The position numbers and the translations under genes were made by a program. Of a stretch of DNA of 64,000 nt, positions 14,209 through 61,896 are shown one piece after another (within the stretch, counting starts at the first letter, position 1; each line of letters starts with the position of its first letter). Where the stretch lies: assembly GCA_051294375.1 (NCBI GenBank), contig JBJCIZ010000239.1:6425996-6489995 (forward strand), in the 5' to 3' direction. Below the pieces are notes generated by a model. The model searched no databases and had not been told where the DNA came from. It saw nothing but the letters and a program-made list of their open reading frames with translations. The DNA comes from Paraspadella gotoi. Its lineage: Eukaryota > Animalia > Chaetognatha.

Positions 14209-14901
14209 TCATTTGGTCCACGAGACTTTGGGGATGTCGTAATGCTCCGACAGTTCGTCCAAGTGTCTGTTAAAGTCTTCGACGCGCTCCTTGTGCGTCT
14301 TCTCCGCTTTCTTCATCACGCGGTCCAGTTGACGCCGCTTCTGGACAGAGTCGTAGGCTTTTTGCGCCGCCGTTCGAGTGTCCCTGGAGAAGGTGGAAAC
14401 AATTTGAAAAAAAAAAACCAAAAAAAACAAAGCGATTGCACGAACAGTTGTTGCTAAGTTTGACTACTTTGTATGTTTGTCCGAAATAGTTATTTTAAAC
14501 TGATATTCAAACTCGCATTAAATTATATTACATTACATAAAATTTTAATTACAATAACGAAAACACCAAAAGACAAAAAATGACGGGAACTTGGTTTCCC
14601 GTTCGTCCTTCGGTCCCGTCCGACCCCAAAAAGCCTCGGTTGAGAGCCCCGCCATTAAATTTTCCCAAATCCTCACCGGCCCCGCGCAAATCTCATACGT
14701 CACTCAAACTCACAGTGGCTCGTCCTCCGAGTCAGACTCGTTCTTTCCGATCTGCGGCGAGCCTCTCGCCTCCTCGCGCAGGTGTCGCTCGATCCTTTCC
14801 TTCGTCTCCTTTTTGGATTTCTTCTTCTTCTTCTTCTTGCTGGAGGATTTAAGTTTTAAGGCGCCGCTCGAGGCCGAAAAGTAAGGATCGTCGGTAGACA
14901 T
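14209..14901 (-). CDS. FAM32A: Protein FAM32A homolog, 2 exons
   Basis: Exons 14901-14714 and 14383-14209. 'GALKLK', a lysine run, and C-terminal 'KTHKERVEDFNRHLDELSEHYDIPKVSWTK*', which is nearly identical to the FAM32A terminus. Confidence 0.95.
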
Positions 14902-15388
14902 CTGAACAACGATTAATTATCACGCACGGAATATAGTTAAAATCGCGGATAAAACCTTTATTGTTTTAGATTAATAAATAACTTTTTTTTTCGTCGAATA
15001 ATCGAAAGCGGTGTAATATTTCTCGGTGTAGGAGGGATATAGAATTAACGGCTCGCACTTTTAGGACGATAACAAATATCTAAAAGATTTACTGCTGGTG
15101 TAGTTTCTAGTGATAAGATTAACAATGTAAACATCAATCACAAATTAATAAAACAGAGCCGAGTAGCACGACAGAAACCCTCGGCATTCCCTTAATAAAA
15201 AAATCAAAAATTATACCCACCCCCTGAAAATAATCATTCATCTCATCAACTAATCACAAATCATGAAAAAAATCACAAGCGTTCTTTACAAGTAAGGAAT
15301 GTATATAAATGATCCGGCAATAAAAACTCAATCCTCGCAGATTAAGAAATATTGCTACTTTTCACCATAAATCGTTTTCATATAAAAG

Positions 15389-15685
15389 CTACATAATAAC
15401 GACGCCGTCAAGAAACGTAAAGTTAGGATCCAAACGACGCCCATAATTCACGTCATCGTCGTCGTCCTCGCCGCTGCCACGCCCCTTGTCGACGTTGACC
15501 TTCTTCCTCGGATTCGGCGGCTGATCGGTGATCGTGCCCCACTCCGCGTAACGCAACGACGGCCGGCGTTCCCGACGAGCGGCGGCGTCGTCGAACCTCC
15601 CCGTCGACACATCCGAGTCGCTGGAGACTCGCGCGCTCCGCCGACGAAGCGTCGGAGCAGCGACGCCGCCGCCCGCCGCCTCCAG
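15389..15685 (-). other. In-frame 98-codon extension after the SAC1 UGA stop (candidate readthrough region)
   Basis: TGA at 15688-15686 is followed by CTG. The same frame stays open to TAG at 15391-15389, and the GC-rich coding-like composition ends at that second stop. Confidence 0.55.
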
Positions 15686-17476
15686 TCAATCCCGCTTCTC
15701 CTTGACGGGGACGAGTTTGGGCCTGTCCACGAACTCCCGGCCGTAGTGAAGAATGAGGCCCATGGAGGCCGCGGCGGCGAAGAGACAAAGAAAGAAGAAA
15801 GGGAGCATCCGGGGAGAGACTTCGGCGGGAACGTAGAGCGAGGAGACGCTGAGAGCGAAGGAGGCGAGGAGGAGAAGAGGAAGGACGGCCACCTTAGCGT
15901 CGCGGCGCCGCGACTCGAGAGGGCAGGGCTTCTGCAGACCCTCGGTCGGCTCCACCACGTAGTTGCCGAGGATGAGGTCGATCGAGTCTTGACGATTTCC
16001 GTCGGAGAAGTTGTTCTTGAAGTAACGAATCGCCGAGTTCCAACCGTCCTTCAAGAGGCCCCATTTGGTGCGGACGCCTGTCCGGGTAAAGTCGGTCTTG
16101 AGGGCAGGGGTTCCCGTGTATTGAATTCCCATGGCGTCGGCGTTGTTGGCCCAGACGTTCTTGAAGACAAACTCGAAGAGCTCTTGGTCGATGAGGTTGT
16201 CCTGAGGGTCGAGGATCCCGGCGTCCTTGAGCTGCGTCTCCAGGGAACAGCGAGCGAGGAGACTTTGCACGACGTTTGTGCGGTCGAGACAGTCGATGCA
16301 GTTGGTCCTGAAGACGCCCTCTTGCGTTTTCGAAGGCAGCGGACTTCGTGACGGCGTCACGGAAAAGTAGCCAATGGCGTCACGGTCCGCGGCCACGCCA
16401 TCGATGAGAAGGCTGAGACGGTGCCAGCGCATGCGGCTGCATTCCTTGTGAAAGTCGAAGGCGACGTACTTGACGTTCTTAGAGGCGGTGGCGGCGCTGC
16501 CGGCGAAGGTCTTTTCCAGCCGACCCTCGCCGCCCTTCTGGTCAACCAGGTTGAGCAGCACCTGCCTCCCGTAGAGCACGACCTGCGAGTCGAAATGTTT
16601 GGTGAAGGCGGCAGCGGCGACGGCGGGTCCGCCCTCAATGAGCGGCTTAGGTTTGTACTTAAGGTTCGGATATTGATTCCAATAAAATGGCATGGAGCCG
16701 CGCGTTTGTACGAAGGACGTCTTCGTCCCGTCGGGCATCTCCACGATCTGCTCCGTCTCCACGTAATTGGCGGCGTTGCCCTCCTCGTCGACGCCGCGCA
16801 TGTAGTAGCGACACCCGGCACGGAAGATGGAGCGGCGCGACACCAGGATGTAGTTGATGGTCTGCCCCTTGACGATGGCTTCTTCCACAGCAACGAAGCC
16901 CAGCATGATGGGCAGAGCGAAACGGCCCAGCTCCGGATTGGCCGTGATCGGACGCAGCAGGTGCCGGTTCCACACGAACCTCTCGTCGCTCCTCTCCCAC
17001 AGGTGGAAGGAGGCGAACTCGGGCGAGGTGTTGTGGAGCCGTTGGAGTGAATGGGTCAGGTCGTAGGAGTAGGAGAAGTAGTAACTTGGTGTCTTGAGAG
17101 CGGCCGTCACCATGGAGAGGTAGCGTCGATTGTTGTCCTGTTGTGTCTCCGACAAATGAAGCGTCGTCTTGGAAAAGGGCAGGACGGCGGCGTCCTCGAG
17201 ACGCCAGACCGTCTCTCCGTTGATGGCGCCGACCTCGGAGCGACCCGTGACCACGACGAGGTAAGGGCCGGCAATGAGGTTTATGACGCCAAAGACGCCG
17301 TAAATCGTCGTCACTTTCGCATCGAGCGGGAGTTTGGAAGGGCCGTCCTGGAGGGAGATTTCGTGGGAGACGCGGTCCACCACCAAGACCTCGCCCACCG
17401 TCGCCGCCGACGTCAGGGACGTCACGTAGTACTTATCCGCCGAGGTGTAGAGGCGGAGCGTCTCGTGGGCGGACAT
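15686..17476 (-). CDS. SACM1L: Phosphatidylinositol-4-phosphate phosphatase SAC1, intronless, 596 aa
   Basis: ATG at 17476. Sac domain 'RRSIFRAGCRYYMRG...NYVETEQ', catalytic CX5R(T/S) 'RTNCIDCLDRTNVVQ', two C-terminal hydrophobic helices, and terminal KEKRD (KxKxx). Confidence 0.97.
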   Translation of the reverse strand: MSAHETLRLYTSADKYYVTSLTSAATVGEVLVVDRVSHEISLQDGPSKLPLDAKVTTIYGVFGVINLIAGPYLVVVTGRSEVGAINGETVWRLEDAAVLPFSKTTLHLSETQQDNNRRYLSMVTAALKTPSYYFSYSYDLTHSLQRLHNTSPEFASFHLWERSDERFVWNRHLLRPITANPELGRFALPIMLGFVAVEEAIVKGQTINYILVSRRSIFRAGCRYYMRGVDEEGNAANYVETEQIVEMPDGTKTSFVQTRGSMPFYWNQYPNLKYKPKPLIEGGPAVAAAAFTKHFDSQVVLYGRQVLLNLVDQKGGEGRLEKTFAGSAATASKNVKYVAFDFHKECSRMRWHRLSLLIDGVAADRDAIGYFSVTPSRSPLPSKTQEGVFRTNCIDCLDRTNVVQSLLARCSLETQLKDAGILDPQDNLIDQELFEFVFKNVWANNADAMGIQYTGTPALKTDFTRTGVRTKWGLLKDGWNSAIRYFKNNFSDGNRQDSIDLILGNYVVEPTEGLQKPCPLESRRRDAKVAVLPLLLLASFALSVSSLYVPAEVSPRMLPFFFLCLFAAAASMGLILHYGREFVDRPKLVPVKEKRD

Positions 17477-42844: not shown

Positions 42845-45800
42845 GTACGTCTTGTTACAATAAAGATCGTTGTTGAAATCAATTTCAAACGTCTTCTACT
42901 AATTCAAAACACAACGAAACGAAAGGAAATTCACGAAGAACTATTGTTAAACTTATTTAGGATTTTATCAATTAAAAAAAAAAAAAAATAACAAAATTTA
43001 AAAAAATTGGAAACAATTTTATGAAAAAAAAACCAATATAAGAAAAAAAAAAAACAACTTGGCCCATCAAAAGTCAGGAGGCAAAATAACTGAATAATTT
43101 TTATATTGTTTGCTCTCATTTCTTAAAAAATACCTTTGTTGAATAATATTTTACTTTCATTCTTATCCATCTTTTTCAGAGGAAAAACTTAAAGTGGATA
43201 CTCCTTCCGTTGTTAAGGTATTCAAATAAAAGATAAATTGAGTTCTTTTGTATTTGTTCATTGAGTCAAATCAATTTATTTCTTTCGCTTAGATGAACAA
43301 TTTCATCAAAGGAAATCCTCTCATCGCGATTGCGGAATGCTTGGCTGAAAAAAACGCCAGTTTGAAATTTCAGTAAGAGGCACTATATATTTTCCAAAAG
43401 CGCCCCATTTCTGTCGCTAATCCTTTAATTTAGTTTTAACTCAAATACTTAAACTAATCTTTTAACAAATATTTAAGTTCACCCTCTGCTAATCCCCAAC
43501 CCATATCCCCCACATTTATTCCCTTACCTTAAACCCTATGTCCTAATCCAAATCCTTGTCCAAATCATTAACCGACTCCTTTGCTTAATCTCTCGTCTTA
43601 ATCCTTAATTCGATTCCTATCCTTAATTCCTTAATCCTTAATTCGAATCCTATCCTTAATCCTCACCTAATTTTAAAACTTGAAAAATAATTTATTTTTG
43701 ATTTTAAGCTGAAATGGTATACGTTTAGAAACTATGGTCGAGAAAGAGTCTGATTTAAATTTTGACTTTTTGTAACAATCAAAAGTAAAAAAGCTAAATT
43801 GATTATTTTTTTTCTGCCCTTGCTAATTTACATTTCAGGTCTCTGATTCCCAACTTTTATAGCTACGATTATGACTGGTGAGAAAATTAAAGATATGTAT
43901 AAAATATAAAAATAGTCGGTAAAAGAGTCACTAACTGACAGTATGGTAAATTCTAATTTAATGTTTAAATCTTTTATAATTTGGGTAAAATTAGATCTTT
44001 ATGTTCTTTATAATTTTACGGCTAGTGTATGAACGAATGAATGAATTTTGCCATCATTTGTGGCAAATCCTAAATTCGCCTCCCGTATTGCTTGGTGAAA
44101 TTCAGCTGGTCCCAGCTAAGTACTCGATCACCAACCATGAGTTCCGGGTTCAATCCCGTCACGGTCATGCTGGTTAAAGTGTGATGGTGTCGGCATAAAT
44201 ACGCCAGTGACCTTGGGTAGTCACTGCAGGTCCAAAGCCCTGAGCGCCAGCCGTCGGGAGATGCCTTACACCCCAGGCATCACACATGTGCCCCCCCGTT
44301 GCCATACATTATCAATAAGAGTGGATCTTTTTTATTTTAATTACTAAATTAGCCACTCCCCTTAATGACCCAATAATCAGCGGGAACGTTGAAAAATGCA
44401 ATCACATGATAAGAGACGGAGGCAAGGATCTTTTCGACAATGGAAATTTCCTCAGCGTCGAAATCAAATCGGAAAACTCGACCGACGCGGACCTTTGGAA
44501 TAAAACGGTGCGTACTGTACCACCGCTCTCTTTTGGCGGGCGCGCTCTATTTCTTAATGATTAAATATTCATCAAGAAGTTTAGAATATTATCATTCTTC
44601 TTTTTTTTTTTATCATTCATCTCGTAACCAAAAAGTTTGGGAGATTGCTAATGTAGTGAGGCGACTTACCACCGGTCTTTCTCTCTAAACCCGGTGGTAA
44701 GTCGCCTCAGAAGTTTTGCAAGAACCATCCTAACCTGGACTAAGGCATCGTGAATGCAGCTTAAAAAATTAACCTACAATGTGCTATTTTGCCTTTGGTC
44801 AACGAAACAGCATTGTATTATAGGTGATATTATGTCCCTACAACCTTGCTTGGTAGCTTGGTTTAGCCTTATTTTCAAAAAGTACCCCAGCTTAAATTCA
44901 AAATTAAGTGAGGCATTTGTTGGTTAACTTAGTGCCTATTTGTTTGATCGGATTAATTTTTTTTTTTCAGGTCAGAATGGAGGAAATCACTTCTTACGCC
45001 GGCGACGCGGCATTTGTCACGTCAAAAAAATCGATGCCCTTTCAATTGGTCGGTATCGTGGGAAACGTAACTGATCCCGTCGTACTTACGGTACGGAATG
45101 CGCCAATGCTGCATTGAATGTCGTATCTCAGTATGCTTGTTGATTTGGTTTTTAAATTTTAAATTTTCGATTTTTGAATTTTAGGATCAGATTATATTAA
45201 AAACTATTAAAAACTATGTTTATTGGGCCAATTTTTTATTTTTAGTCCAATTTTTATCAACTTACGACGATCGTTTTTCCTTTACAACATTTTGCCAGAA
45301 ATTCAAAATCTAAAAATAAATATAAGTGTAAAAATTAATATAAAAAAATTTAAATCTAAATATATATATAAAATGAAATCGGCCACCGAACTTACCCGCT
45401 TCCCTACCCGCGCAGATCCAACAGTGCGCCAATTACGGCGCCGACGGAAAGGGTAAGCACCGATCCTCTTCCGGCGAATTCAACGTGAATTCACACGGGG
45501 TTCACCTCACAGTCTCATTTTATACGGAGGAGCTCTACGGAACGAGGGACGCTAGCGTCACAAAAGTGAGGAAATATCGCAGCTAGTTCTCTCTCTCTCT
45601 CTCGCTCTCTCTCTCCCTCTCTCTCTCTCTCGATTTACAATTTCACATATTGAGCATAATTAATTTCTAGTATGCATATTTCTCTACCCCCTCTCTCTTC
45701 CTAAAGTTAAATTTAAAAATATTTAGCATGATAAATAAAAAAATTAAATCTTTCTCTCTCTCTCCCTCTCTCTCTGTCAACAAAACGAAATTCACTGTCA

Positions 45801-46616
45801 AAAAAGTTCGAATCCAGCATTAATTGCTAAACTAACTTTAACCAGCCATACAATATACAATAGACAATCTAAAAAAACCCTTTATCTCTCAAACTCACCC
45901 ACAAATCTTTTCCCTTACCCATCCCCCCATCTCCCCCTTAATTTCCCTGCAGGTGTTCTACGTCGTGGAGGCTTCCTCCACCAACGACGCCGAACTTCTC
46001 GTCAAAGTCTGGCGTCCGGGAAAGAGTCTTCAGCAGAGCTGCGATTCCCTGTCGGTGCTGCAGCCCAAGAACCTCGTCTTTGGCTACACGCTGTTGTCGA
46101 GATACGAGAACAATTACTTCAATAAGAATTCCGGTTGAAAGAAGGGATGGGGAGGAGGGGGGGAGGTAGAGGGTGAGGAGGGGGGGAGGTAGAGGGTGAG
46201 GAGGGGGGGAGGGAAGGGGAGCGAGGGGGGGAGCGAGGAGGGAGGGCAGGATGAGATGAGGGAGGGAATGAAGAGATTATATATACTACATGACATAACA
46301 TTACTACATGACTACAATAACTTTTGTTTTTTTTTAGTTTTAGGATTTCCTGAAGGCGGCGCTAGCAGTCATTTAGGTTTGAGGATTTTTTCCCTTCTTA
46401 ACAAATGAGCAACTAACTATAGGCGAGTTATGATGGCGTCTGATGAATAAAACTGATTAAACTGATTAAACTGATTATGAACATTTTTAAGTGGGTCAGA
46501 CCGATGGACAAACATAGCGACCGATCGACCGACAGAGCGCTGGGAGAGGTTATGGGAAAGAGAAAATGAAAGGAAAGGAGAATGCTACAAAGGGACGAAA
46601 AGAAAGAAAGAAAGAA

Positions 46617-46674
<58 letters not shown>

Positions 46675-46838
46675 TAGAACTATATATATAGAGAGAAGAA
46701 TGAAAATAGGAGATTAAAATATAATGTAAAATAAATCAATATGCAGGCGACGCTCTCATTCAATCTGTTCTACGATCGATGACGAAGACTTGCGTCGGAT
46801 CTTTGATCGGCGAAGCTCACGCGTCGAAGAATGATTGA
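39105..46838 (+). CDS. Uncharacterised type II single-pass membrane protein, ~542 aa, 14 exons
   Basis: Exons 39105-39207, 39348-39528, 40472-40546, 40625-40713, 41473-41561, 41906-42089, 42348-42467, 43180-43217, 43293-43372, 44381-44507, 44971-45090, 45416-45565, 45953-46133, 46747-46838. All junctions are GT-AG with matching phases and no internal stops (1629 nt). Acidic cytoplasmic N-terminus, TM 'FTLGFLVAMALILVAQLALLIVIHV', a helical stalk, and a C-terminal domain with 'IRDGGKDLFDNGNFL' and 'ANYGADGKG'. Confidence 0.8.
40841..41449. mobile_element. MITE with ~27-bp terminal inverted repeats and degenerate CCCTAA-like interior; contains a family-1 element
   Basis: Left GGCTCTCTTTTCCAAAAGCGCCCAATTT; right AAATGGGGAGCTTTTGGAAAAGAGAGCC. 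A related end occurs at 43379. Confidence 0.7.
44085..44320 (+). mobile_element. tRNA-derived SINE with a CORE-like motif (family 2); degenerate relatives at ~47665 and ~56550
   Basis: B-box GGGTTCAATCCC at ~44145 and central GTGACCTTGGGTAGTCACT, which resembles the CORE-SINE palindrome GTGACCTTGGGCAAGTCACT. Confidence 0.6.
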
Positions 46839-47970
46839 AACAAACAAACTATGTACATTGTACATTGTGCAAAGGAACGAAACAACGGAACAAACTATTG
46901 GGAAGGACAAATGGAATCGTTGGATAATTGGATTAAATTAGATTGATGCTTTAAAGAATTATATCGAAATGATTACTTTTTTTTATTAACTTGTGATATT
47001 GATGAACTTTTTTTTTTCAAATAATTCTTGTCCAAGTTCAATGAGAGCTTCAGAACTTTAGTTTTATTCAGAATATTTTTAAACCTCTTTCCGCTTTAGT
47101 ACGCTAAAATCTTTGCTTTTAGTACACAATTGCTCAACTCTGCTCTGGTTAAACCTAGAAGATAATTCGGGAATTGATATAATCATCAAAGGTGGAATCT
47201 AAACCAAGGAATCGAATCGGAATCTTATCGGAATCAAACCGGATCAGAGACTCGGATGAAATCAACCAAGAACTCACTGATCGGATGAATCAACCAATGA
47301 GAAGAGGGGCTTCAAGCCATCGGGAAAAAGAACCCATGTCGATGATCCAATGGCTCTGTATAAATACTGACCATTTCTGTATTGATTCAATCTGCCTGTA
47401 AACTCTCACACCGTTCTTTGCTTGTGAAATATTTGTCAATTAATTCCACCATTGGTTTCATGTTGAAATCTCTGTCTACTTACTTAAATGTGGTTCCACC
47501 AAACGCGTACGTACGAAGCAAAAACTTATATCAAACTTATACCGACATTTTGTTCTAATATAATCTTCAAATTAACTAATTCTTAACCCTAATCCTTAGC
47601 TTAATGTTAATCGTTTACTAAAATCATCCGTCCTACTTTTCTCAATCTTTAGTAATTATTGTTTTGTGGCGAATCCTAAATTCAATTCCCGTTTAACTTG
47701 GTGAAACTCAGCTAAGTACTCATTCACCATTCACCAACCGTGAAGCCCAGCTTCAATCCCCTCACAGTCACGCTGGTTTAGTGAAATGGTGTCAGTATAA
47801 ACTAGCCAATGACATGGAGTGATCAGTCATCACTACGGGGACAGAACCCTTACAATTTTAGTAAAAAGAAAAAAAAGCCAAATCCTTTTAACCATCTCTA
47901 TATATTTCAAAATTAAAAACTACTCAATATATCACATTATACCTCGCCGCCGTTGTATATTTTTCCTCTT

Positions 47971-48294
47971 TCACAACACCCCGGCCCCTTGCTCTTGCTC
48001 GGCGACCAGCTCCAAGAAGACTTGCTCCAGCGTGCACTGGGAGAACTGATACTCCTCGATGCCGACGGCTTCCTTGTTCCGCTCCAACGCCTCGAAGATC
48101 TCCGCCAGGGACTTGACGGCGTGCTGGGGGATCTTGAGGATGATTCGTCCGTCGAAATTCTCGCGCACTTCGAAGTTGTCGCCGTAGAGAGACTCGGTGA
48201 GAGCGAGAAAGGCCACTTCTCGATCCTATTTTTAATGGGGGAGGGGAAGAGGGGGGTAGGGTTTAGGGGGGGGGTGGAATAGAGAGTGTGAAAA

Positions 48295-48326
<32 letters not shown>

Positions 48327-51300
48327 AGAACAGAACCGTTCAATATAAGCAGTCCCCTGAGCTTCGGATCAGGCTGTAACACCGAGTTACAGGCGGGTTA
48401 AGCGCCCCGTCCCTCTAAACTGCTAGGCGACCACCGGGCTAGAACCCCGGACCTTTGGGTTGGGAGGCGAATGACTTGCCTCCAGCACCAATGGCCGCTG
48501 ATGAACGTTTGGTGGATTTTCGTCCACCATATAACAAACATATAAAATTGTAGAAGACGAAAATAGTTGGAATAAAAATATGAAGAAGGTGAAGAATTGT
48601 GACGACGTAAGAGAAGTAGAAAAGAAGAAAAAAAAAAAGGGAAAATAATTAATCCCCCCCCCACCGCCCCCTTCCATTTCAACCTTTTCCTCACCTTTTC
48701 CTCACCTTAATAACCTTCTCGTCCTCCTCCTTGGGTCGGTGCAGCTTCACCTCCAGGATGTAACCCGACCCGTGCTTCTGCTTGAGATGCTGCGACGTCC
48801 CGATCGTGCGGAGCCGACCGCGCATCACGATCCCGATGCGCGAGCAGAGGGCGTCCGCTTCCTCCATTGCGTGGGTGGTGAGAATGGCGCCGCGGTGTTT
48901 GCCTGCCAAGTTTGTGGAGTAAGAGTATACATTTAAAAGTTTTAAGAAAATAACAATTTTTAAAAAAAAATTTTTGAAACCGTTTTTTTTAATTCCTTGT
49001 AAAAATGTTGATATAAGAAAATATAAAAAAAATATATAACTAGGATGAAATTAAAATTCATGGATTTAAGAAAGAGAAACGGGGCGCCATCGGAAAAGAG
49101 AGCCGTATTTCCCGACACCTGAGCAGGCGTTGTGAATCAAGTCCCACAAGACTCTCTTGGAGGCGGAGTCCATCCCCGTCGAGGGTTCGTCCAACAACAG
49201 CACTTGAGGTTCCCCCAGCATCGCGATGGCGAGAGAGAGTTTGCGACGGGTCCCGCCTTTCGAGTTTATGTGTGGGTTGGGTTGGGGAGAGGGGAGAAGG
49301 GAGAAAATAGAGGAAAATAAAAGGTAAGGACGGGCAAGGTGTAACATAGAGAGAACAACTGGTAAGTTCGGGGTGTTGCGCCGCAGTGGCTTTTATTCGT
49401 GGACGCTTTTCTAGATGATCACGTGACTAGACAACGTGATAAACATATGGACAACGAATTTCTAATGGTTTACTACTTAATTGTGAAGTTTTAACTTAAG
49501 AAAAAATTAAGTTGCTTTGATTTTTTGATAACGTGAACGTATTTTTATATGAAAATGGTACAACCAATATAAATTGATCCATTCATACAATAAATAAGTT
49601 TTCTTGCCCCGGACTTTGGACAGGCTATGGTGGTTTAAGGCCTTCATCACTCTTACAAGATAATGACTGAGCAAGCTTTCAATCAAAAGACTCTCTCACA
49701 GTCTCGTTAATTCACCCCCAGAGTAACTGGCTTCCCTATCAATGAAGTGTAATAATACTTCAAAGAATGTTTCAATTGTATAAAAGGACCACTCTATAAA
49801 GTATTAGATCGGGGAATACTATATTCTATTCCACACTAGAATCAAAATACATGTGACTGCGCAAGAAGGATTTTTAATATAATCTAATATTTAAGGGAAT
49901 CCTCTTTTCATACAATTGAAACATTCTTTGAAATATTATACCATTTGACTGATAGGGAAGTACTCTGGGAGTAAATAAACGAGACTGTGAGAGAGTCTTG
50001 ATTGAAAGCTTGCAGGGACCTGCTATATCATTATCTTGTAAGAGTGATGGAGGCCTTAAACCTCCAAAGCCTGTCCAAAGTCAGAGGCAAGATAGCTTAT
50101 TTATTAAATGAATGAATAATTTTTATATTGGTTGTACCAATTTCATACCATACCAGTATGCTAAGTATTAAGCAAAAATGACCAAGTATTTCATGAATTA
50201 CGCGGCATTTCATTTCTAAACAACNNNNNNNNNNTTATCCCCCCCCACACACAAACCAACCCGAGAGCGACTTGGCGGGCGTGTCGGCGTTCTTGGTGAT
50301 CCTCAAAGCCTCCGTGATCTTCCTGGCCAGATACTTGGCCTCCGACTTGGGGATTCCGCGGACGAGAGCGAAGTCGACGATTTGCTCCTCGACGCCGAAG
50401 TTGTCGAAGAGGGCGTCGAATTGTGGGACGTAGCCCATCGCCTTGGGGGGGGGGGGTTGGGGGGGGATGGGGAAGGAGAATTGTTTAATTCTGGAAATGA
50501 AGAGAAGAGAAGAGAAAAACGAAAATTTAAAACAAAAAATATTAAAAAATGAATAAAAGAATCTATTTTTTTTTTCTCTTTTGAAAAAGAACCCAAGCCG
50601 CAATTTTTCTCCTACATTGATAAAAAGTTTAAAGAGATGGTTATGAAATTAGATTGAATTTCTCAATCTCATTTACATATTGCAGTATAAATATCAATAT
50701 CAATTCCGTTTTGCTTCTCTCATTTCATGCATATCTAAAAGACCTCGCCCACCCCCTCTCAAACTTTTCTCCCACACACTTTAGCCCCCCCCCCCTCAAT
50801 CGTTACCTCCAACGCCCGAGCTTTGGAAGTCGTGATGGGATGTCCTCCAACGATGACCGTTCCGCTCGAAGGCGGCGTCGATCCGATGATGATGTTTTGC
50901 GTCGTGGATTTCCCGGCGCCGTTGGGACCCAAGAGGCCGAAGACCTCTCCGCGTCGAACGCAAAAGTCCATCTGATCGACGGCCTTTTTTACCTCCACCA
51001 CCTTTAGAGATTGGGTAATAGGCATGAACAGTAGGGTGGAGTGATGAAAAGATTGAGTGATTGAATATTATTTTTTTTGCTTATAATCAATTAATTTTAA
51101 ATCTTCAAATAAAACTGTTTTTGTCCTAAATTTTTTTCAAAATTTTTTTTAGCATAACAGTATAGTAAATTAAATTATTTATGGAGTAATATCCTTATAA
51201 AATCGTGAAATTTCAAAATAATTTTTTTCTTTTTAAAAACAGATTTGGATTCACCGTAAAAAACTAAAAAACTTTTATAAAATATGTTATATGATATTTT

Positions 51301-51883
51301 AATGTTTGGATTACAAAAAATGACTAAAACGTTTTAACATATATAAGTTTCTACTACAGAAAATAAAAAATCATGAATTTTTATTTTTTTCCCGTTTTAA
51401 ACGCTGAAGATGACAGAATTTTTGATAACATATTTTATATTTTTGATTCAACTTTTTATGAAAAATCTGAATCTTTATTAAAAATATTAAAAAAATTATT
51501 TTTAAAATTTACTATTTTATAAGATTATTACTACAAATATATTATATTTTACTATTCTGTTTCCAAGACAATATGAACAAAATATTTTTGTACTAATTAA
51601 TCAAACTATCTCACATTTAAATATCCTTGTTCGATTATTCAAATAATTTTTTTGTTCTTGAGTGCTCCACTCTAATGAACAGGTTAAAAACTAGAAGTTC
51701 TTTCAAATAGATAATGGTAAAGTGACTGTTAAATAATATGAAAATGAAAATAGTTTTAAGATTTATCTAATAGATAAGCGCCCACATCTATAAGCATTTA
51801 TAAGCATTTCTAAGTAATTCATCACTTTCCACTTATCATTCACTTTCTATAATATCATTTCCATTTTATCATTTTATCTTCCA

Positions 51884-51940
<57 letters not shown>

Positions 51941-52596
51941 ACACCTTCAACATCTTCCTCCTCCTAAAGTATTTCTTCAAATTCTTAACGATAACCACGG
52001 GCAGAGTCTTCGAGTCTGCGCGGAGATCCAACGCCTCCACGTAGCGTCGCTCCGCCTCCACATCCGGGTCGATTCCTCTGCCCATGTCCATGGAAGATCG
52101 GATCGAGAGCTTGCTGAAGACCGGATTGGATTGGGGGGGGGAGGGAATGTACGCAAATAGGACGGAACTCGGTCGGCCTCGTGACGTCATTGGTCGTTCT
52201 CTTTGCGAATTGAATGATAGAGAAATGAAATGAACGATAGAGACAGACTTATTTGGGCTTTTGATTATTTGGCCATTGATTTTTGGGGCTTGAACCTTCG
52301 GCCTTCGGCCATAAACTTTCGATCTAAACTCTTTCTTAGAAATGGGAAACTAGTTCGAAGGCCTTCCATTAATTGATGTAATCCATTAATTATCTTTTCT
52401 TATTACTTCTCGAATTTTATTATGAATATATATATATATATATATATANNNNNNNNNNNNNNNNNNNNNNNNNNNNNNNNNNNNNNNNNNNNNNNNNNNN
52501 NNNNNNNNNNNNNNNNNNNNNNNNNNNNNNNNNNNNNNNNNNNNNNNNNNNNNNNNNNNNNNNNNNNNNNNNNNNNNNNNNNNNNNNNNNNNNNNN

Positions 52597-52629
<33 letters not shown>

Positions 52630-53579
52630 ACCTGGCACCCTTAGCCGCATCCTTGACGGATAACGTGTTTGGATTTTGTTCGGCATTCTGCGACAAGATG
52701 AGGAAGAGGAGGAAGAAGAAGAGGAAGAATAGGAGGAAGAAGAGGAGGAGAAGAGGAGAAGAAGAGAAGAAGGAGGGAGGAAGAAGAGGAAGAAGAAGAG
52801 AAGGAAGAAAAGTAGGAAGAAGAGAAGGAAGAAGAGAAGGAAGAAGAGGATAAAGAAGAGGAGGAAGAAGAGGAGGAAGAAGAGAAGGAAGAAGAGGAGG
52901 AAAAAGAGGAGGAAGAAGAGGAGGAAAAGGAGTAGGGGACGTAATAAAAAACAAAACACGAGATATCGGATATGGTAATCGGTAGAGATTACAGAGTGAA
53001 ACCTTTTAAAACGAAATGTACAGATATCCAATGAAACTGCAAATCTCCTTTCCTCCCATCTTTTTCTTTCCTCTGTTTCTCCTCCTATTCTCCTTTCCTC
53101 CCTTCCTCCTCCCTTCCTCATCATTTTTCCTCCCATCTTCTCCTCTCTTACCTCCCTCTCTTCCACATTACTTTCTCCTTCCCTCCTCACTTCTTTCCTC
53201 CCCATCTTCTCCTCCCTTCTCCCTTCTCCCCCTCCCTTCCCCCACACACTCCTCCTCGCTCTCTCACCTTATTATCCCCGGATCTGAGTGAACGCCTCGG
53301 AAACGTTTCCAAGTTATCGGCGAATTGCAGCTTCCTTCCCGCGTTCGCGTTCACCCTCGAGCTTCCGGGAAGGATCTTTACTTTCAACTCTTTGTCGTCG
53401 TTGTTGTCGTCCTTGTCGTCGTTGTTGCTGTTGTTGTTATAAACGTTGTCGTCGTTGTTGTTGTTATAAACGTTGTCGTCGTTGATGTTGTTGCTGTTGC
53501 TGTTTTTCCTCTCTTCATTTTTACCATCGACGTAATAATCATCATCATCATCATCTTCATCTTGCTCAGTTTCGTAATT
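47971..53579 (-). CDS. ABC transporter subfamily A, 3' part (linker, NBD2, regulatory C-terminus)
   Basis: Exons 53579-53268, 52687-52632, 52113-51945, 51001-50807, 50441-50261, 49256-49119, 48902-~48707, 48225-47971. 'DVEAERRYV', Walker A GPNGAGKSTT, 'MGYVPQFDAL', signature [10 protein letters not shown], Walker [12 protein letters not shown], 'LTTHAMEEADALC', and terminal 'FSQCTLEQVFL'. Confidence 0.92.
48331..48530 (-). mobile_element. Family-1 element, best-preserved copy; 72-nt tRNA-like head at 48498-48427
   Basis: Acceptor stem GCGGCCA/TGGTCGC, T-arm CCGGG-GTTCTAG-CCCGG, anticodon loop CT-CCC-AA with a broken stem. It is flanked by inverted AACCGTTCA/TGAACG(G/T)TT and a terminal GGTGGA...TCCACC hairpin. 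Confidence 0.75.
49548..50147. mobile_element. Fold-back (long inverted repeat) MITE, TA-bounded; second copy at 58432-59032
   Basis: TATGAAAATGGTACAACCAATATAAA ... TTTATATTGGTTGTACCAATTTCATA, with ~240-bp imperfect arms. Related fragments at ~1270-1390, ~6390-6420, ~53700 and ~63120. Confidence 0.8.
51032..51674. mobile_element. hAT-type MITE in an ABCA intron with a perfect 8-bp TSD; duplicate copy at 59863-60509
   Basis: ATGAACAG|TAGGGTGGAG ... CTCCACTCTA|ATGAACAG. Confidence 0.88.
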
Positions 53580-54128
53580 CTGCCCCAAAAACAGACGACG
53601 ACAAAAAAATTAATATCATTATTAGTATAATTATTAAAAATATTAATAATTCAAAATATAAAAAATATTAGCTAGTGAGACAAATGATTTTAATATACAA
53701 TTGAAACAACTCTGGGAGTGAGTGAGAGTATTGATTGAAAGCTTGCAGAATAATTAATTAATTAATTAATAAATTGATTGAAAGCTTGCAGGATCCTGCT
53801 AAGGTATTATCTAGTGAGAGGTCATGAATAAAAAAAATAATATTAATTAATTAATTAATTAATTATCTGATCAGCTGCTCACCGCTTGTAGAAAATGTTT
53901 ATTATTTTCTATGCCAGAGTTGAGGCAAAGGATCGTGGGCAGATCCGGAATTGTTTGCTCAATCTTGTTTAACTAATGTTTAACTTTTATGCCGTTTGGA
54001 CCAATTTCATATCATAATTGCATGTATGTGATTAGTGATTAGTAGTGATTACAAATTTCATTGTCGGGCTTACAGTGGTTAACCCACGAGTCCACGTTAA
54101 CCCNNNNNNNNNNNNNNNNNNNNNNNNN

Positions 54129-57100
54129 AAAAAGAGAGAGATTTTACGACGTCGTTTTTTCCTTTAACATGTTTGCCAGAAATCAAAATCTAAAAAATAA
54201 ATATAAGTGTAAAAAATTAATATAAAAAAATTTAAATCTAAATATATATATAAATGAAATCGGCACCGAACTTACCGGCTTCCCTACCGCGCAGATCCAA
54301 CAGTGCGCCAATTACGCGCGCCGACGGAAAAGGGTAAGCCCCGATCCTCTTCCGGCGAATTCAACGTGAATTCACACGGGGTTCACCTCACAGTCTCATT
54401 TTATACGGAGAGCTCTACGGAACGAGGGACGCTAGCGTCACAAAAGTGAGGAAATATCGCAGCTAGTTCTCTCTCTCTCTCTCGCTCTCTCTCTCCTCTC
54501 TCTCTCTCTCGATTTTACAATTTCACATTTGAGCATAATTAATTTCTAGTATGCATATTTCTTCTACCCCCTCTCTCTTCCTAAAGTTAAATTTAAAAAT
54601 ATTTAGCATGATAAATAAAAAAATTAAATCTTTCTCTCCTCTCCCCTCTCTCTCTGTCAACAAAACGAAATTCACTGTCAAAAAAGTTCGAATCCAGCAT
54701 TAATTGCTAAACTAACTTTAACCAGCCATACAATATACAATAAACAATCTAAAAAAACCCTTTATCTCTCAAAACTCACCCACAAATCTTTTCCCTTACC
54801 CATCCCCCATCTCCCCCTTATTTCCCTGCAGGTGTTCTACGTCGTGGAGGCTTCCTCCACCAACGACGCCGAACTTCTCGTCAAAGTCTGGCGTCCGGGA
54901 AAGAGTCTTCAGCAGAGCTGCGATTCCCTGTCTGTGCTGCAGCCCAAGAACCTCGTCTTTGGCTACACGCTGTTGTCGAGATACGAGAACAATTACTTCA
55001 ATAAGAATTCCGGTTGAAAGAAGGGATGGGAGGAGGGGGGGAGGTAGAGGTGGTGAGGGGGGGAGGTAGAGGGTGAGGAGGGGGAGGGAAAGGGGAGCGA
55101 GGGGGGGAGCGAGGAGGGAGGGCAGGATGAGATGAGGGAGGGAATGAAGAGATTTATATATACTACATGACATAACATTACTACATGACTACAATAACTT
55201 TTGTTTTTTTTTAGTTTTAGGATTTCCTGAAGGCGGCGCTAGCAGTCATTTAGGTTTGAGGATTTTTTCCCTTCTAACAAATGAGCAACTAACTATAGGC
55301 GAGTTATGATGGCGTCTGATGAATAAAAACTGATTAAACTGATTAAACTGATTATGAACATTTTTTAAGTGGGTCAGACCAATGGACAAACATAGCGACC
55401 GATGACCGACAGAGCGCTGGGAGAGGTTATGGGAAAGAGAAAATGAAAGGAAAGGAGAATGCTACAAAGGGACGAAAAGAAAGAAAGAAAGAAAGGAGAG
55501 AGGAGAGAGAGTGAGAGAAGAGAGAGAGAGAGAGAAGAGAGAAGAGAGAGAGAAGAGAGAGATTATAGAACTATATATATAGAGAGAAGAATGAATAGGA
55601 GATTAAAATATAATGTAAAATAAATCAATATGCAGGCGACGCTCTCATTCAATCTGTTTCTACGATCGATGACGAAGACTTGCGTCGGATCTTTTGATCG
55701 GGCGAAGCTCACGCGTCGAAGAATGATTGAAACAAACAAACTATGTACATTGTACATTGTGCAAAGGAACGAAACAACGGAACAAACTATTGGGAAGGAC
55801 AAATGGAATCGTTGATAATTGGATTAAATTAGATGATGCTTTAAAGAATTATATCGAAATGATTTACTTTTTTTTATTAACTTGTGATATTGATGAACTT
55901 TTTTTTTTCAAATAATTCTTGTCCAAGTTCAATGAGAGCTTCAGAACTTTAGTTTTATTCAGAATATTTTTAAACCTCTTTCCGCTTTAGTACGCTAAAA
56001 TCTTTGCTTTTAGTACACAATTGCTCAACTCTCTCTGTTAAACCTAGAAGATAATTCGGAATTGATATAATCATCAAAGGTGGAATCTAAACCAAGGAAT
56101 CGAATCGGAATCTTATCGGAATCAAACCGGATCAAGAGACTCGGATGAAATCAACCAAGAACTCACTGATCGGATGAATCAACCATAGAGAAGAGGGGCT
56201 TCAAGCCATCGGGAAAAAGAACCCTTGTCGATGATCCAATGGCTCTGTATAAATACTGGACCATTTCTGTATTGATTCAATCTGCCTGTAAACTCTCACA
56301 CCGTTCTTTGCTTGTGAAATATTTGTCAATTAATTCCACCATTGGTTTCATGTTAGAAATCTCTGTCTACTTACTTAAATGTGGTTCCACCAAACGCGTA
56401 CGTACGAAGCAAAACTTATATCAAACTTATACCGACATTTTGTTCTAATATAATCTTCAATTAACTAATTCTTAACCCTAATCCTTAGCTTAATGTTAAT
56501 CGTTTACTAAAATCATCCGTCCTACTTCTCAATCTTTAGTAATTATTGTTTTGTGGCGAATCCTAAATTCAATTCCCGTTTAACTTGGTGAAACTCAGCT
56601 AAGTACTCATTCACCATTCACACACCGTGAAGCCCAGCTTCAATCCCCTCACAGTCACGCTGGTTTAGTGAAATGGTGTCAGTATAAACTAGCCAATGAC
56701 ATGGAGTGATCAGTCATCAACTACGGGGACAGAACCCTTACAATTTTAGTAAAAAGAAAAAAAAGCCAAATCTTTTAACCATCTCTATATATTTCAAAAT
56801 TAAAAACTACTCAATATATCACATTATACCTCGCCGCCGTTGTATATTTTCCTCTTTCACAACACCCCGGCCCCTTGCTCTTGCTCGGCGACCAGCTCCA
56901 AGAAGACTTGCTCCAGCGTGCACTGGGAGAACTGATACTCCTCGATGCGACGGCTTCCTTGTTCCGCTCCAACGCCTCGAAGATCTCCGCCAGGGACTTG
57001 ACGGCGTGCTGGGGGATCTGAGGATGATTCGTCGTCGAAATTCTCGCGCACTTCCGAAGTTGTCGCCGTAGAGAGACTCGGTGAGAGCGAGAAAGGCCAC

Positions 57101-57182
57101 TTCTCGAATCCTATTTTTAATGGGGGAGGGGAAGAGGGGGGTAGGGTTTAGGGGGGGGGTGGAAAGAGAGTGTGAAAAGGTG

Positions 57183-57217
<35 letters not shown>

Positions 57218-60200: not shown

Positions 60201-60711
60201 AAAAATCATGAATTTTTATTTTTTCTCCGTTTTTTAAACGCTGAAGATGACAGAATTTTTGATAACATATTTTATATTTTGATTCACCTTTTTATGAAAA
60301 AATCTGAACTTTATTAAAAATATTAAAAAAATTATTTTTAAAATTTACTATTTTATAAGATTATTACTACAATATATTTATATTTTACTATTCTGTTTCC
60401 AAGACAATATGAACAAAATATTTTTTACTAATTAATCAAACTATCTCACATTTAAATATCCTTGTTCGATTATTCAAATAATTTTTTTGTTCTTGAGTGC
60501 TCCACTCTAATGAACAGGTTAAAAACTAGAAGTCTTTCAAATAGATAATGGTAAAGTGACTGTTAATAATATGAAAATGAAATAGTTTTAAGATTTATCT
60601 AATAGATAAGCGCCCACATCTATAAGCATTTATGCATTTCTAAGTAATTCATCACTTTCCACTTATCATTCTTTTCTTAATATCATTCCATTTTTATCAT
60701 TTTATCTTCCA

Positions 60712-60772
<61 letters not shown>

Positions 60773-61853
60773 TCTCTCATCTCTCCACACCTTCAACATC
60801 TTCCTCCTCCTAAAGTATTTCTTCAAATTCTTAACGATAACACGGGCCAGATCTTCGAGTCTGCGCGGAGATCCAACGCCTCCACGTAGCGTCGCTCCGC
60901 CTCCACAATCCGGGTCGATTCCTCTGCCCATGTCCATGGAAGATCGGATCGAGAGCTTGCTGAAGACCGGATTGGATTGGGGGGGGAGGGAATGGTACGC
61001 AATAGGACGGAACTCGGTCGGCCTCGTGACGTCATTGGTCGTTCTCTTTGCGAATTGAATGATAGAGAAATGAAATGAACGATAGAGACAGACTTATTTT
61101 GGGCTTTTGATTATTTGGCCATTGATTTTTTGGGCTTGAACCTTCGGCCGTTCGGCCATAAACTTTCGATCTAAACTCTTTCTTAGAAATGGGAAACTAG
61201 TTCGAAGGCCTTCCATTAATTGATGTAATCCATTATCTTTTTTTCTTATTACTTCTCGAATTTTATTATGATATATATATTAAGGCGTGTGAAAGTTACA
61301 TACAAGATCTAAAGTCAATTATGAACAACATACCATCAGTGAACATTATTTAAAAAAAATAATTTTTATTTTTTATTTCGCTAGTAGGCTATATTTATAT
61401 ATAGTACTATCCTTATAAAATGAAAAAATTTCAAATAGCTTTTCTTAATTTTGATTGCAGATTTGATTCCTCGTCAAAAGTTGATAAAAGAAATAAAATC
61501 ATTTTTAAAATTCTTTCATAGTGGGTAAAATTTAAAAAACTATATTAATATATAAAAAGTTAAATTTTCAGTTAAAATATGCTTTTTCTAATTTTTGACC
61601 CACTTAATGAAGGAATTTTTCAAAAGAGTTATATCTTTATCAACTTTTTATGACGCTCCAAATCTGCAAAAAAATCTTAGAAAAAACTGTTTGAATTTAA
61701 TATTTATTGGTTTATACAGTATAAATTGCCTACTGCGTAAATTGTAAACATTTATTCTAATTTTTTTTATTAATATAGTGTTGTCATTCCTCACTTTTAG
61801 AATTTTAATAAAGTTAAATTTAGCAATTTTACTACGCTTATATATATATATAT

Positions 61854-61896
<43 letters not shown>

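What the first reader, a model, noticed from the sequence alone, without database searches (positions are those of the whole stretch)
15389..15690. Candidate programmed stop-codon readthrough on SAC1 that would bury its ER-retrieval dilysine motif
Seen: the SAC1 stop is UGA followed by CUG. The frame stays open for 98 more codons (LEAAGGGVAAPTLRRRSARVSSDSDV...EDDDDDVNYGRRLDPNFTFLDGVVIM*). The GC/CpG-rich exon-like composition persists ~290 nt and ends at the second in-frame stop, whereas neighbouring genes become AT-rich or simple-repeat within ~50 nt of their stops. A small hairpin (GCTCCGAC-GCTTC-GTCGGCGGAGC) lies ~30 nt downstream. Known: UGA-C(U) is the leakiest termination context in animals, and the SAC1 C-terminal KxKxx (here KEKRD) is a COPI-binding ER-retrieval signal that works only at the extreme C-terminus. 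Inference: readthrough would give an extended SAC1 isoform that escapes ER retrieval, a translational switch on PI4P phosphatase localisation. I do not know of this being described for SAC1.
Basis: partly seen in the sequence, partly recalled or inferred. Interest (0 to 1): 0.8.

Follow-up and report, generated by a model that had tools for sequence, protein, structure and literature searches.

The report
Conserved stop-codon readthrough tail on SAC1
The lipid phosphatase gene SAC1 in this marine animal is followed, in the same reading frame past its UGA stop, by a 98-codon tail that relatives conserve as protein; so some ribosomes very probably read through the stop and make a longer SAC1 whose ER-retrieval signal is no longer at the end.

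Summary
SAC1 is a single exon on the minus strand (17476..15689) ending KEKRD-TGA-CTG. The frame stays open for 98 codons to TAG at 15391..15389, and exon-like GC content ends exactly there.

The window alone proves little: an open frame this long has a chance probability of about 0.06 at this GC content. Relatives decide the matter. Seven related lineages on marine plankton contigs (71-78% SAC1 identity to the window) carry the same arrangement:
- UGA is always the first stop, and CUAG always follows it.
- The extension runs 102-152 codons, is always in frame 0, and has no in-frame stop.
- All end in LDRVVI[M/I]-stop and share the motif W-x-x-ITDQPPNP.
- dN/dS is 0.09 in the closest pair, and invariant residues use 2-4 synonymous codons.

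The best explanation is programmed UGA readthrough. It would add a disordered cytosolic tail and make the KxKxx COPI signal internal.

Vertebrate SACM1L is a published readthrough candidate, but with a different context (UGA-A plus stem-loop) and a different 19-38-residue tail. This case is a new, clade-specific member that uses the known UGA-CUAG motif, weakened to UGA-CUGG in the window. Translation and localisation remain untested.

The parts
15689..17476 (-). SAC1 (phosphoinositide phosphatase) main ORF, 596 aa, single exon; catalytic CX5R(T/S) motif CIDCLDRTN at 16300..16274
   Evidence: Pfam Syja_N E 3e-85. 71-78% identical to the SAC1 ORFs of the plankton relatives and 50-53% to named animal SAC1. 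Coordinates.
15743..15898 (-). Two C-terminal hydrophobic (transmembrane) segments, 15898..15830 and 15808..15743. They would place the tail after them on the cytosolic side.
   Evidence: Hydrophobic stretches AKVAVLPLLLLASFALSVSSLYV and MLPFFFLCLFAAAASMGLILHY. The topology is inferred from established SAC1 knowledge and was not computed.
15689..15703 (-). KEKRD, the C-terminal KxKxx dilysine (COPI retrieval) motif of the short isoform
   Evidence: Sequence. KEKxx is kept in all clade members. The COPI role of SAC1 KxKxx is cited in PMC6563779.
15682..15688 (-). Leaky stop and its 3' context, UGA CUG G. Relatives have UGA CUA G.
   Evidence: TGA in 9 of 9 lineages. CTA is the next codon in 8 of 8 relatives although CTA makes up 3% of Leu codons in their SAC1 ORFs. 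Motif literature.
15392..15685 (-). Readthrough extension, 98 codons, in frame 0 with SAC1
   Evidence: Open frame. Homologous in-frame extensions of 102-152 codons in 7 relatives. pN < pS in all 28 pairs, and omega 0.09 in the closest pair. Predicted disordered.
15611..15646 (-). Basic then Ser/acidic stretch RRRSARVSSDSD (RRS-x-S-E-S...D-D in relatives); a possible phosphorylation site cluster
   Evidence: Alignment A4: S36 is invariant and an R-R/K-S core is kept in most lineages. The kinase-site reading is inference.
15509..15541 (-). Conserved block 1, W-G-T-ITDQPPNP
   Evidence: W and ITDQPPNP are invariant in 8 lineages and encoded by 2-4 synonymous codons per residue.
15452..15469 (-). 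Acidic tract EDDDDD
   Evidence: An acidic run precedes block 2 in all lineages.
15392..15430 (-). Conserved block 2 and new C-terminus, DP-N-F-TF-LD-G-VVIM
   Evidence: D, P, F, L, D, V, V, I are invariant, with synonymous codon variation at every degenerate position. In all lineages the second stop follows directly.
15389..15391 (-). Second, terminating stop (TAG). GC-rich exon-like composition ends here.
   Evidence: The second stop varies among lineages (TAG, TGA, TAA), unlike the first.
15635..15658 (-).
   Evidence: Not part of the MFE fold, and z = +0.28 against shuffles. No conserved pairs in the alignment of 8 lineages.

Best explanation
A fraction of ribosomes decode the SAC1 UGA stop (15688..15686) with a near-cognate tRNA and translate 98 further codons. 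This would yield two proteins from one mRNA.

- The short form ends in KEKRD, a terminal KxKxx signal that COPI uses to return SAC1 to the ER.
- The long form carries a disordered cytosolic tail. In it KEKRD is internal, and therefore presumably inactive, and a new conserved C-terminus is exposed: an acidic tract followed by DP-x-F-x-x-LD-x-VVIM, plus an upstream W-x-x-ITDQPPNP motif.

Readthrough is driven by the stop context and not by an RNA structure. Relatives carry the known high-readthrough motif UGA-CUA-G. The window species keeps the core UGA-CU and the following G but has G in place of A, so its readthrough is probably lower.

What is shown: the tail is a protein-coding sequence under purifying selection, always in frame with SAC1 and contiguous with it, and the stop and its context are conserved at the nucleotide level. 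What is inferred: that readthrough is the decoding mechanism, how efficient it is, that the long form escapes COPI retrieval, and that the hydrophobic C-terminus acts as an anterograde or PDZ-type signal.
For: (1) Frame and openness. Eight lineages (window, L002/L003, L004, L007, L008, L009, L010, L014) have extensions of 98, 102, 102, 102, 122, 152, 109 and 111 codons. All have 0 stops in frame 0, against 1-9 stops in each other sense frame. The chance of such openness given composition is 0.0016-0.017 per relative.

(2) Protein-level selection. The closest pair, L002 and L007, shows 3/4/23 differences at codon positions 1/2/3 (binomial p = 1.5e-6) and dN/dS = 0.09. pN < pS in all 28 pairs. 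Every invariant residue with a degenerate codon uses 2-4 synonymous codons.

(3) Nucleotide-level selection on the signal. The first stop is TGA in 9 of 9 lineages, while the second stop varies. The next codon is CTA in 8 of 8 relatives, although CTA is 3% of Leu codons in their SAC1 ORFs. UGA-CUAG gave 7-31% readthrough in four human genes. UGA-CU alone is a sufficient core motif in Ustilago and HeLa cells.

(4) No alternative decoding route.
- No SECIS or other Rfam hit at E <= 10.
- No conserved AUG. The window tail has no internal ATG at all.
- Conservation starts at the first codon after the stop, with L-E invariant.
- The organism's real intron is AT-rich with GTGAGT...Y-tract-CAG, and nothing like it flanks the stop.
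- The junction is identical in type on DNA contigs (window, L001, L014) and on RNA-derived contigs (L010, which has spliced FAM32A).

(5) UGA is an ordinary stop in this genome, since both neighbouring genes end in TGA.

(6) The tail family occurs nowhere else. An exhaustive profile search of 1.84 billion representatives returned only these ORFs, so it is not a fused foreign gene.

(7) There is precedent in the same gene: vertebrate SACM1L.
Against: - There is no direct evidence of translation: no ribosome profiling, no peptides, no reporter assay.
- The window species has UGA-CUG-G, not CUA-G. In the OPRL1 context all four nucleotides after UGA mattered, so readthrough here could be weak.
- One nested lineage (L005/L006) keeps TGA-CTAGAG but has lost the tail, leaving 30 codons and then another gene. 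The tail is therefore dispensable in at least one species.
- GC3 of the extension is lower than that of the main ORF. That fits low-level translation, but it also means weaker coding signatures.
- Vertebrate SACM1L gave <1% readthrough in HEK-293T cells and about 1% in yeast.
- The localisation consequence is entirely inferred.
- The identity of the organism was not established.
Confidence: 0.85

Rival explanations
1. A minor alternatively spliced mRNA removes the stop codon. One candidate is the in-frame 27-nt GT...AG segment GTCAAG...TGACTGGAG, which would join SAC1 directly to the tail.
For: Val codons supply a GT upstream, and CTAGAG/CTGGAG supplies an AG downstream. Their conservation could in principle reflect an acceptor site (sequence). 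Short-read assemblies report only the major isoform.
Against: - The segment is GC-rich and has no polypyrimidine tract or donor consensus.
- The one verified intron nearby is about 330 nt, AT-rich, and reads GTGAGT...CAG.
- All contigs, including the RNA-derived ones, retain the stop.
- The L-E residues directly after the stop are conserved as codons in frame.
- UGA identity would not need to be conserved for splicing.
Confidence: 0.04
2. The tail is an independent small protein, translated as a downstream cistron by reinitiation, an internal start, or trans-splicing in an operon-like SAC1-FAM32A unit.
For: Gene callers did-135-aa ORFs from internal ATGs in relatives. L010 looks bicistronic with FAM32A.
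Against: - The window tail has no ATG before its last codon.
- ATG positions in relatives are not aligned.
- Conservation and the open frame begin at the codon after the UGA.
- The tail is in frame 0 with SAC1 in 8 of 8 lineages despite length changes, about (1/3)^7 if frames were free.
Confidence: 0.04
3. The UGA is recoded by another route: selenocysteine insertion, or A-to-I editing of UGA to UGG.
For: UGA is the Sec codon. A small hairpin includes the stop in L002, L007 and L010.
Against: - No SECIS-family match at E <= 10 in the window 3' region or in four relatives' contigs.
- UGA-CUAG is the readthrough context, not a Sec context.
- The stop-spanning hairpin is 5 bp and is absent from the window, L004, L008 and L009.
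- A 5' G is the neighbour ADAR disfavours most (general knowledge).
- All assemblies show TGA.
Confidence: 0.04
4. The GC-rich segment is an untranslated 3' UTR or chance ORF, or it codes on the opposite strand.
For: In the window alone, openness has p of about 0.06 and one antisense frame is also open.
Against: In relatives only frame 0 of the sense strand is open. Substitutions are third-position biased in that frame, and the motifs are conserved as amino acids with synonymous codon turnover.
Confidence: 0.01

Closest known systems
Vertebrate SACM1L (SAC1) stop-codon readthrough candidate (Jungreis et al. 2011, as cited in Loughran et al. 2014, PMC4132726, and Chan et al. 2013, PMC3609751)
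   Same: - It is the orthologous gene.
- The UGA stop is conserved and lies directly after the KxKxx tail (KEKID in human, KEKRD here), with Asp as the last sense residue.
- There is a protein-coding signature downstream of the stop.
- Conservation of the extension is concentrated at its extreme C-terminus.
   Different: - The vertebrate context is UGA-A with a conserved 3' stem-loop. Here it is UGA-CUAG (UGA-CUGG in the window) with no conserved structure.
- The vertebrate tail is 19-38 aa and ends ..NWSLY. Here the tail is 98-152 aa and ends ..LD-x-VVIM.
- I saw no sequence similarity on inspection; this was not tested formally.
- Published conservation reaches back only to cartilaginous fishes.
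- Three invertebrate phyla sampled here lack the long tail, so the two cases look independent.
UGA-CUAG high-readthrough genes (OPRL1, OPRK1, AQP4, MAPK10, MDH1, LDHB; PMC4132726, PMC4207609, PMC12233894)
   Same: Relatives carry the identical heptanucleotide UGA CUA G, conserved against codon-usage pressure. No RNA structure is needed. AA at positions -9/-8 and G at -3 are also present here (sequence).
   Different: The window species has G instead of A at the third position after the stop. It is a different gene, and the extension is far longer than the 13-31-aa tails of most of these cases. Efficiency is unmeasured.
Readthrough-generated targeting switches (peroxisomal PTS1 on LDHB/MDH1 and on fungal glycolytic enzymes; PMC4207609)
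   Same: One mRNA gives a major isoform and a minor isoform that differ in a C-terminal sorting signal, using a UGA-CU(A) context.
   Different: Those cases add a signal (PTS1). Here the main predicted effect is to disable a position-dependent signal (terminal KxKxx) and perhaps add another. This is untested.
KxKxx/COPI retrieval of SAC1 (Blagoveshchenskaya et al. 2008, as cited in PMC6563779)
   Same: The short isoform has Lys at positions -3 and -5 of a cytosolic tail after two transmembrane segments, as in mammalian SAC1.
   Different: Nothing is known about regulation of this signal by recoding. The known regulation of SAC1 ER-Golgi shuttling in mammals is post-translational.

Membership tests
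Functional translational readthrough at the UGA-CUAG motif | First stop is UGA and is conserved as UGA among relatives | tested here: met
   TGA in the window and in all 8 related lineages, while the second stop varies among TAG, TGA and TAA.
Functional translational readthrough at the UGA-CUAG motif | CUAG immediately 3' of the stop | tested here: inconclusive
   Relatives: CTAG in 8 of 8, with CTA otherwise 3% of Leu codons. Window: CTGG. It keeps the core UGA-CU (sufficient in Ustilago and HeLa cells) and the G, but lacks the A that was critical in the OPRL1 context.
Functional translational readthrough at the UGA-CUAG motif | In-frame second ORF with a protein-coding evolutionary signature | tested here: met
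   Frame 0 open in 8 of 8 lineages; omega 0.09 in the closest pair; third-position bias p = 1.5e-6; synonymous turnover at invariant residues.
Functional translational readthrough at the UGA-CUAG motif | Extended protein is actually made (reporter, ribosome footprints or peptides) | not testable with these tools
Vertebrate-type SACM1L readthrough | Orthologous SAC1 gene with UGA directly after the KxKxx tail | tested here: met
   Syja_N domain; 50% identity to vertebrate SAC1; KEKRD-TGA here against KEKID-TGA in human.
Vertebrate-type SACM1L readthrough | Conserved stem-loop 3' of the stop | tested here: not met
   RNAalifold on 8 lineages gave 0 consensus pairs. The window's local fold has z = +0.28.
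Vertebrate-type SACM1L readthrough | Extension of 19-38 aa with a conserved four-residue C-terminus (..WSLY) | tested here: not met
   The tail is 98-152 aa and ends VVIM or VVII. The vertebrate terminus was read from the paper's supplementary alignment.
Selenoprotein (UGA = Sec) | SECIS element in the 3' UTR | tested here: not met
   No SECIS-family hit at E <= 10 in window 14400..16000 or in L002-L005.
Dilysine (KxKxx) COPI-retrieved membrane protein | Lys at -3 and -5 from the free C-terminus of a cytosolic tail | tested here: met
   True for the short isoform: K-E-K-R-D-stop after two hydrophobic segments. In the long isoform these lysines lie 98 residues further from the C-terminus. COPI binding itself is not testable here.

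The most novel reading that the evidence does not exclude
Readthrough of the SAC1 stop codon is a recurrent, or possibly ancient, bilaterian device. On this reading it arose or was remodelled separately in three groups: vertebrates (UGA-A plus stem-loop, tail ending WSLY), this plankton clade (UGA-CUAG, about 100-residue tail ending VVIM), and perhaps nemerteans. Both sampled nemerteans, Lineus and Tubulanus, have UAG-CUAG and 10-12-codon tails ending in Val.

The common selected function would be to produce a minor SAC1 pool whose KxKxx is masked and replaced by a hydrophobic C-terminal export or PDZ-type signal. That would be a translational set-point for how much PI4P phosphatase sits beyond the ER.
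Probability: 0.3. Interest if true: 0.75.

Novelty: new member of a known kind. Interest (0 to 1): 0.6.

Why it matters
Vertebrate SACM1L has been an unexplained readthrough candidate since 2011. It shows a strong evolutionary signature, yet gave <1% readthrough in cell lines, and no function has been proposed in the papers I could read.

An apparently independent case in an invertebrate clade bears on this. It sits on the same gene at the same position, directly after the position-dependent KxKxx signal, but uses the well-understood UGA-CUAG motif and an unrelated, longer tail. That argues selection acts on what the two cases share: removing the dilysine from the C-terminus in a fraction of molecules.

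This turns a vague candidate into a testable hypothesis about how cells set the ER/Golgi distribution of the main PI4P phosphatase. It also supplies two sharply conserved short motifs, W-x-x-ITDQPPNP and acidic-DP-x-F-x-x-LD-x-VVIM, for partner hunting. Finally, the window species' CUA-to-CUG change in a GC3-driven genome is a natural experiment on the motif.

Tried and rejected
- **Window-only statistics.** Open-frame probability is about 0.06 and the fold z-score is +0.28. These are not significant, so I did not rely on them.
None was found. A 5-bp hairpin pairing UGACU with AGUCA occurs only in L002, L007 and L010.
- **SECIS or Rfam elements.** None.
- **Pfam on the tail.** Only a sub-threshold DTHCT hit, E 0.07, judged low-complexity noise.
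- **Two scans of JGI metagenome contigs** with tail and junction alignments returned nothing confirmable.
- **Exhaustive profile search.** It found no members outside the same ORF family apart from one weak hit in a 2785-aa protein (E 1.2e-4), which I judged a low-complexity match without inspecting it.
- **Long tail in named invertebrates.** Absent in Lineus, Tubulanus, Owenia and Glandiceps.
- **FFAT motif reading of block 2.** Rejected because the position that must be aromatic is T, Y, N, S or R.
- **CaaX box.** Rejected because there is no Cys.
- **PTS1.** Rejected because the terminus is not SKL-like.
- **LIR-type (F-x-x-L, W-x-x-I), delta-COP W-x(n)-F, PDZ class II, and C-terminal hydrophobic ER-export readings.** They remain untested ideas from memory. 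Support from the papers read is limited to C-terminal valine signals.
- **AlphaFold on the tail.** pLDDT 57, pTM 0.12, no secondary structure. This is consistent with disorder, but the model is low-confidence.
- **Organism identity.** Not resolved. The relatives are Tara-type marine plankton contigs, and no named genome exceeds 53% SAC1 identity. No common 5' leader was seen on the contigs.
Full report
**What is in the window**

On the minus strand a single uninterrupted ORF encodes SAC1. It starts at ATG 17476..17474 and is 596 aa long. It matches Pfam Syja_N at E 3e-85, carries the catalytic CIDCLDRTN motif, and has two C-terminal hydrophobic segments. The protein ends K-E-K-R-D (15703..15689), followed by TGA (15688..15686) and CTG GAG. 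The same frame then runs 98 sense codons to TAG at 15391..15389.

GC in 50-nt bins stays at 0.56-0.80 for 250 nt past the first stop. It drops to 0.24-0.36 immediately after the second. The two same-strand neighbours are an MRPL49/Img2-like gene upstream and FAM32A downstream. Both end in TGA, and both become AT-rich at once.

**Is the window alone convincing?**

No. At 65% GC a 98-codon open frame has a chance probability of about 0.06. One antisense frame is equally open. The 103 nt after the stop fold no better than dinucleotide shuffles, with z = +0.28, and the proposed hairpin at 15658..15635 is not in the minimum-energy structure.

**Relatives settle it**

A protein search with SAC1 plus the extension found six close but unnamed relatives (72-74% identity in that search, 596-598 aa). 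They lie on marine plankton contigs of Tara Oceans type. The best named hits reach only 50-53%: nemertean, annelid, hemichordate, echinoderm and spider sequences.

A profile of the tail alone found nine short ORFs and nothing else. An exhaustive HMM search of 1.84 billion representatives gave the same family only. Reading the contigs shows that each of these ORFs lies immediately after a SAC1 ORF.

Seven further lineages share the same arrangement (L002/L003, L004, L007, L008, L009, L010, L014):
- SAC1 ends KEKxx-TGA-CTAGAR.
- The tail is in frame 0 with SAC1.
- There is no in-frame stop for 102-152 codons.
- The tail ends ...DP-x-F-x-x-LDRVVI[M/I]-stop, after an acidic run and an upstream W-x-x-ITDQPPNP block.

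The other two sense frames hold 1-9 stops each. The probability of such openness given composition is 0.0016-0.017 per relative.

**Selection acts on the protein in that frame**

The closest pair, L002 and L007, differs at 30 nucleotides in the tail. These are distributed 3/4/23 over codon positions 1/2/3 (binomial p = 1.5e-6), giving dN/dS = 0.09. The main ORF of the same pair has dN/dS of about 0.01. In all 28 pairs pN is below pS.

Every invariant residue of the two blocks that has a degenerate codon is written with 2-4 different synonymous codons across lineages.

The window lineage branches first in a neighbour-joining tree of SAC1, and synonymous sites are saturated against all the others. 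Yet it keeps all 18 invariant tail residues. Constraint therefore also acted on the lineage of the window.

**The signal is conserved at the nucleotide level**

The first stop is TGA in 9 of 9 lineages, whereas the second stop is TAG, TGA or TAA. The codon after the stop is CTA in 8 of 8 relatives, although CTA makes up only 3% of 434 Leu codons in these SAC1 ORFs and is absent from several of them.

UGA-CUA-G is the published high-readthrough context. It gave 7-31% readthrough for OPRL1, OPRK1, MAPK10 and AQP4 in HEK-293T cells and about 3.5% for MDH1. All four nucleotides were critical in the OPRL1 context. UGA-CU alone is a sufficient core motif in Ustilago and HeLa cells, and A at the next position stimulates further.

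The window has UGA-CUG-G. Its SAC1 uses no CTA at all among 64 Leu codons, so the A-to-G change fits the genome's strong GC3 pressure. It probably lowers readthrough without abolishing it. That last point is inference.

**Alternatives examined**

- Selenocysteine: there is no SECIS-family or other meaningful Rfam match at E <= 10 in the window's 3' region or in four relatives.
- Independent cistron: the window tail contains no ATG before its final codon, ATGs in relatives do not align, and conservation (L-E, then an RRS-x-S-E-S stretch) begins at the first codon after the stop.
- Splicing around the stop: the only candidate is a GC-rich 27-nt GT...AG segment with no polypyrimidine tract. The organism's verified intron, in FAM32A at about 14715..14386, is roughly 330 nt, AT-rich, and reads GTGAGT...Y-tract-CAG.
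- Contiguity in RNA: contig L010 carries FAM32A without that intron, so it is RNA-derived. It still carries the SAC1 end, the stop and the tail contiguously.
- Structure-driven readthrough: RNAalifold finds no consensus pair after the stop.
- Sequencing error or recent nonsense mutation: excluded, because the TGA is conserved and SAC1 orthologues of other phyla end at the same position.

**Nature of the tail**

The tail is rich in Arg, Asp, Gly, Ala and Ser. AlphaFold gives pLDDT 57, pTM 0.12 and no secondary structure. It looks like a disordered linker carrying short conserved motifs.

From established SAC1 topology it follows the second membrane segment on the cytosolic side. This is inferred and was not computed.

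Making KEKRD internal follows directly from the sequence. Loss of COPI retrieval follows from the established requirement that dilysine signals sit at the extreme C-terminus, and from the reported role of KxKxx in returning SAC1 to the ER.

A hydrophobic C-terminus such as VVIM or VVII could act like the C-terminal valine-type ER-export or GRASP-PDZ signals described for other membrane proteins. That remains a hypothesis. I considered FFAT, CaaX and PTS1 readings and rejected them on sequence.

**Comparison with what is known**

Human SACM1L is one of the four original PhyloCSF readthrough candidates. Its extension is conserved back to cartilaginous fishes, is 19-38 residues long, has a conserved last four residues, follows a UGA-A context, and has a 3' stem-loop. 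Measured readthrough was below 1% in HEK-293T cells and about 1% in yeast.

The present case shares the gene, the UGA, and the position right after KxKxx. It differs in context, in lacking a structure, and in a much longer tail with no similarity that I could see.

The long tail is absent from a heteronemertean, a palaeonemertean, an annelid and a hemichordate. It has also been lost secondarily in one nested plankton lineage, L005/L006, which still keeps TGA-CTAGAG. I therefore file it as a new, clade-restricted member of known UGA-CUAG-type functional readthrough. Its origin is probably independent of the vertebrate SACM1L case.

I found no paper linking SAC1 readthrough to COPI or dilysine masking. 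That search covers open-access text only.

**Verdict**

The readthrough interpretation is supported as strongly as comparative sequence analysis allows. The hairpin and the claim of complete novelty are not supported. Translation itself, its efficiency with CUG, and the localisation switch remain to be shown experimentally.

Noticed in passing
L011 (Lineus longissimus) around 8713; L015 (Tubulanus polymorphus) at the SAC1 stop: Both nemertean SAC1 genes end KxKxx-TAG-CTAGA. They have short in-frame tails, LESRGPGGPFLV* (12 codons) and LDYLSEIKVV* (10 codons), both ending in Val. Stop-CUAG occurs in 2 of 2 distant nemerteans, whereas Owenia and Glandiceps have TAA and no such context. This may be a further case of SAC1 readthrough.
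   Followed up: partly
L005 1835-2528; L006: One nested lineage keeps TGA-CTAGAG but has only 30 in-frame codons with no tail motifs. A reticulon-homology (RETREG/ARL6IP1-like) gene starts 115 nt after the SAC1 stop on the same contig. This looks like secondary loss of the tail through a change of downstream neighbour.
   Followed up: partly
window 14209-14901 (minus strand); L010 1131-1490: FAM32A lies about 490 nt downstream of the tail on the same strand, both in the window (two exons, about 330-nt GTGAGT...CAG intron) and in L010. In L010 it is intron-free and sits on one contig with the SAC1 3' end. That suggests a bicistronic or read-through transcript, that is, operon-like organisation. 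An MRPL49-like gene lies about 380 nt upstream of SAC1, also on the same strand.
   Followed up: partly
window 15686-17476: SAC1 has no introns here or in the plankton relatives. In Lineus, Tubulanus, Glandiceps and Owenia the gene spans about 4.6-89 kb with many introns.
   Followed up: no
window ~45680-54000 and ~54560-63420: A tandem segmental duplication of about 9 kb (start-to-start spacing 8832-9419 nt). The matching blocks are mostly 91-100% identical, with one at 82%, and include several GC-rich exon-like islands.
   Followed up: partly
L002 2091-2106; L007; L010 (stop codon region): A 5-bp hairpin pairs the stop and the next two bases (UGACU) with AGUCA nine bases downstream. It gave a chance-level Rfam hit to a small stem-loop family. 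It is absent from the window and from three other lineages.
   Followed up: yes
window 15392-15685 and the relatives' extensions: GC3 of the extension is consistently lower than in the SAC1 main ORF: 0.74 against 0.80 in the window and 0.47-0.61 against 0.57-0.77 in relatives. This is what one would expect for a region translated at low frequency.
   Followed up: no
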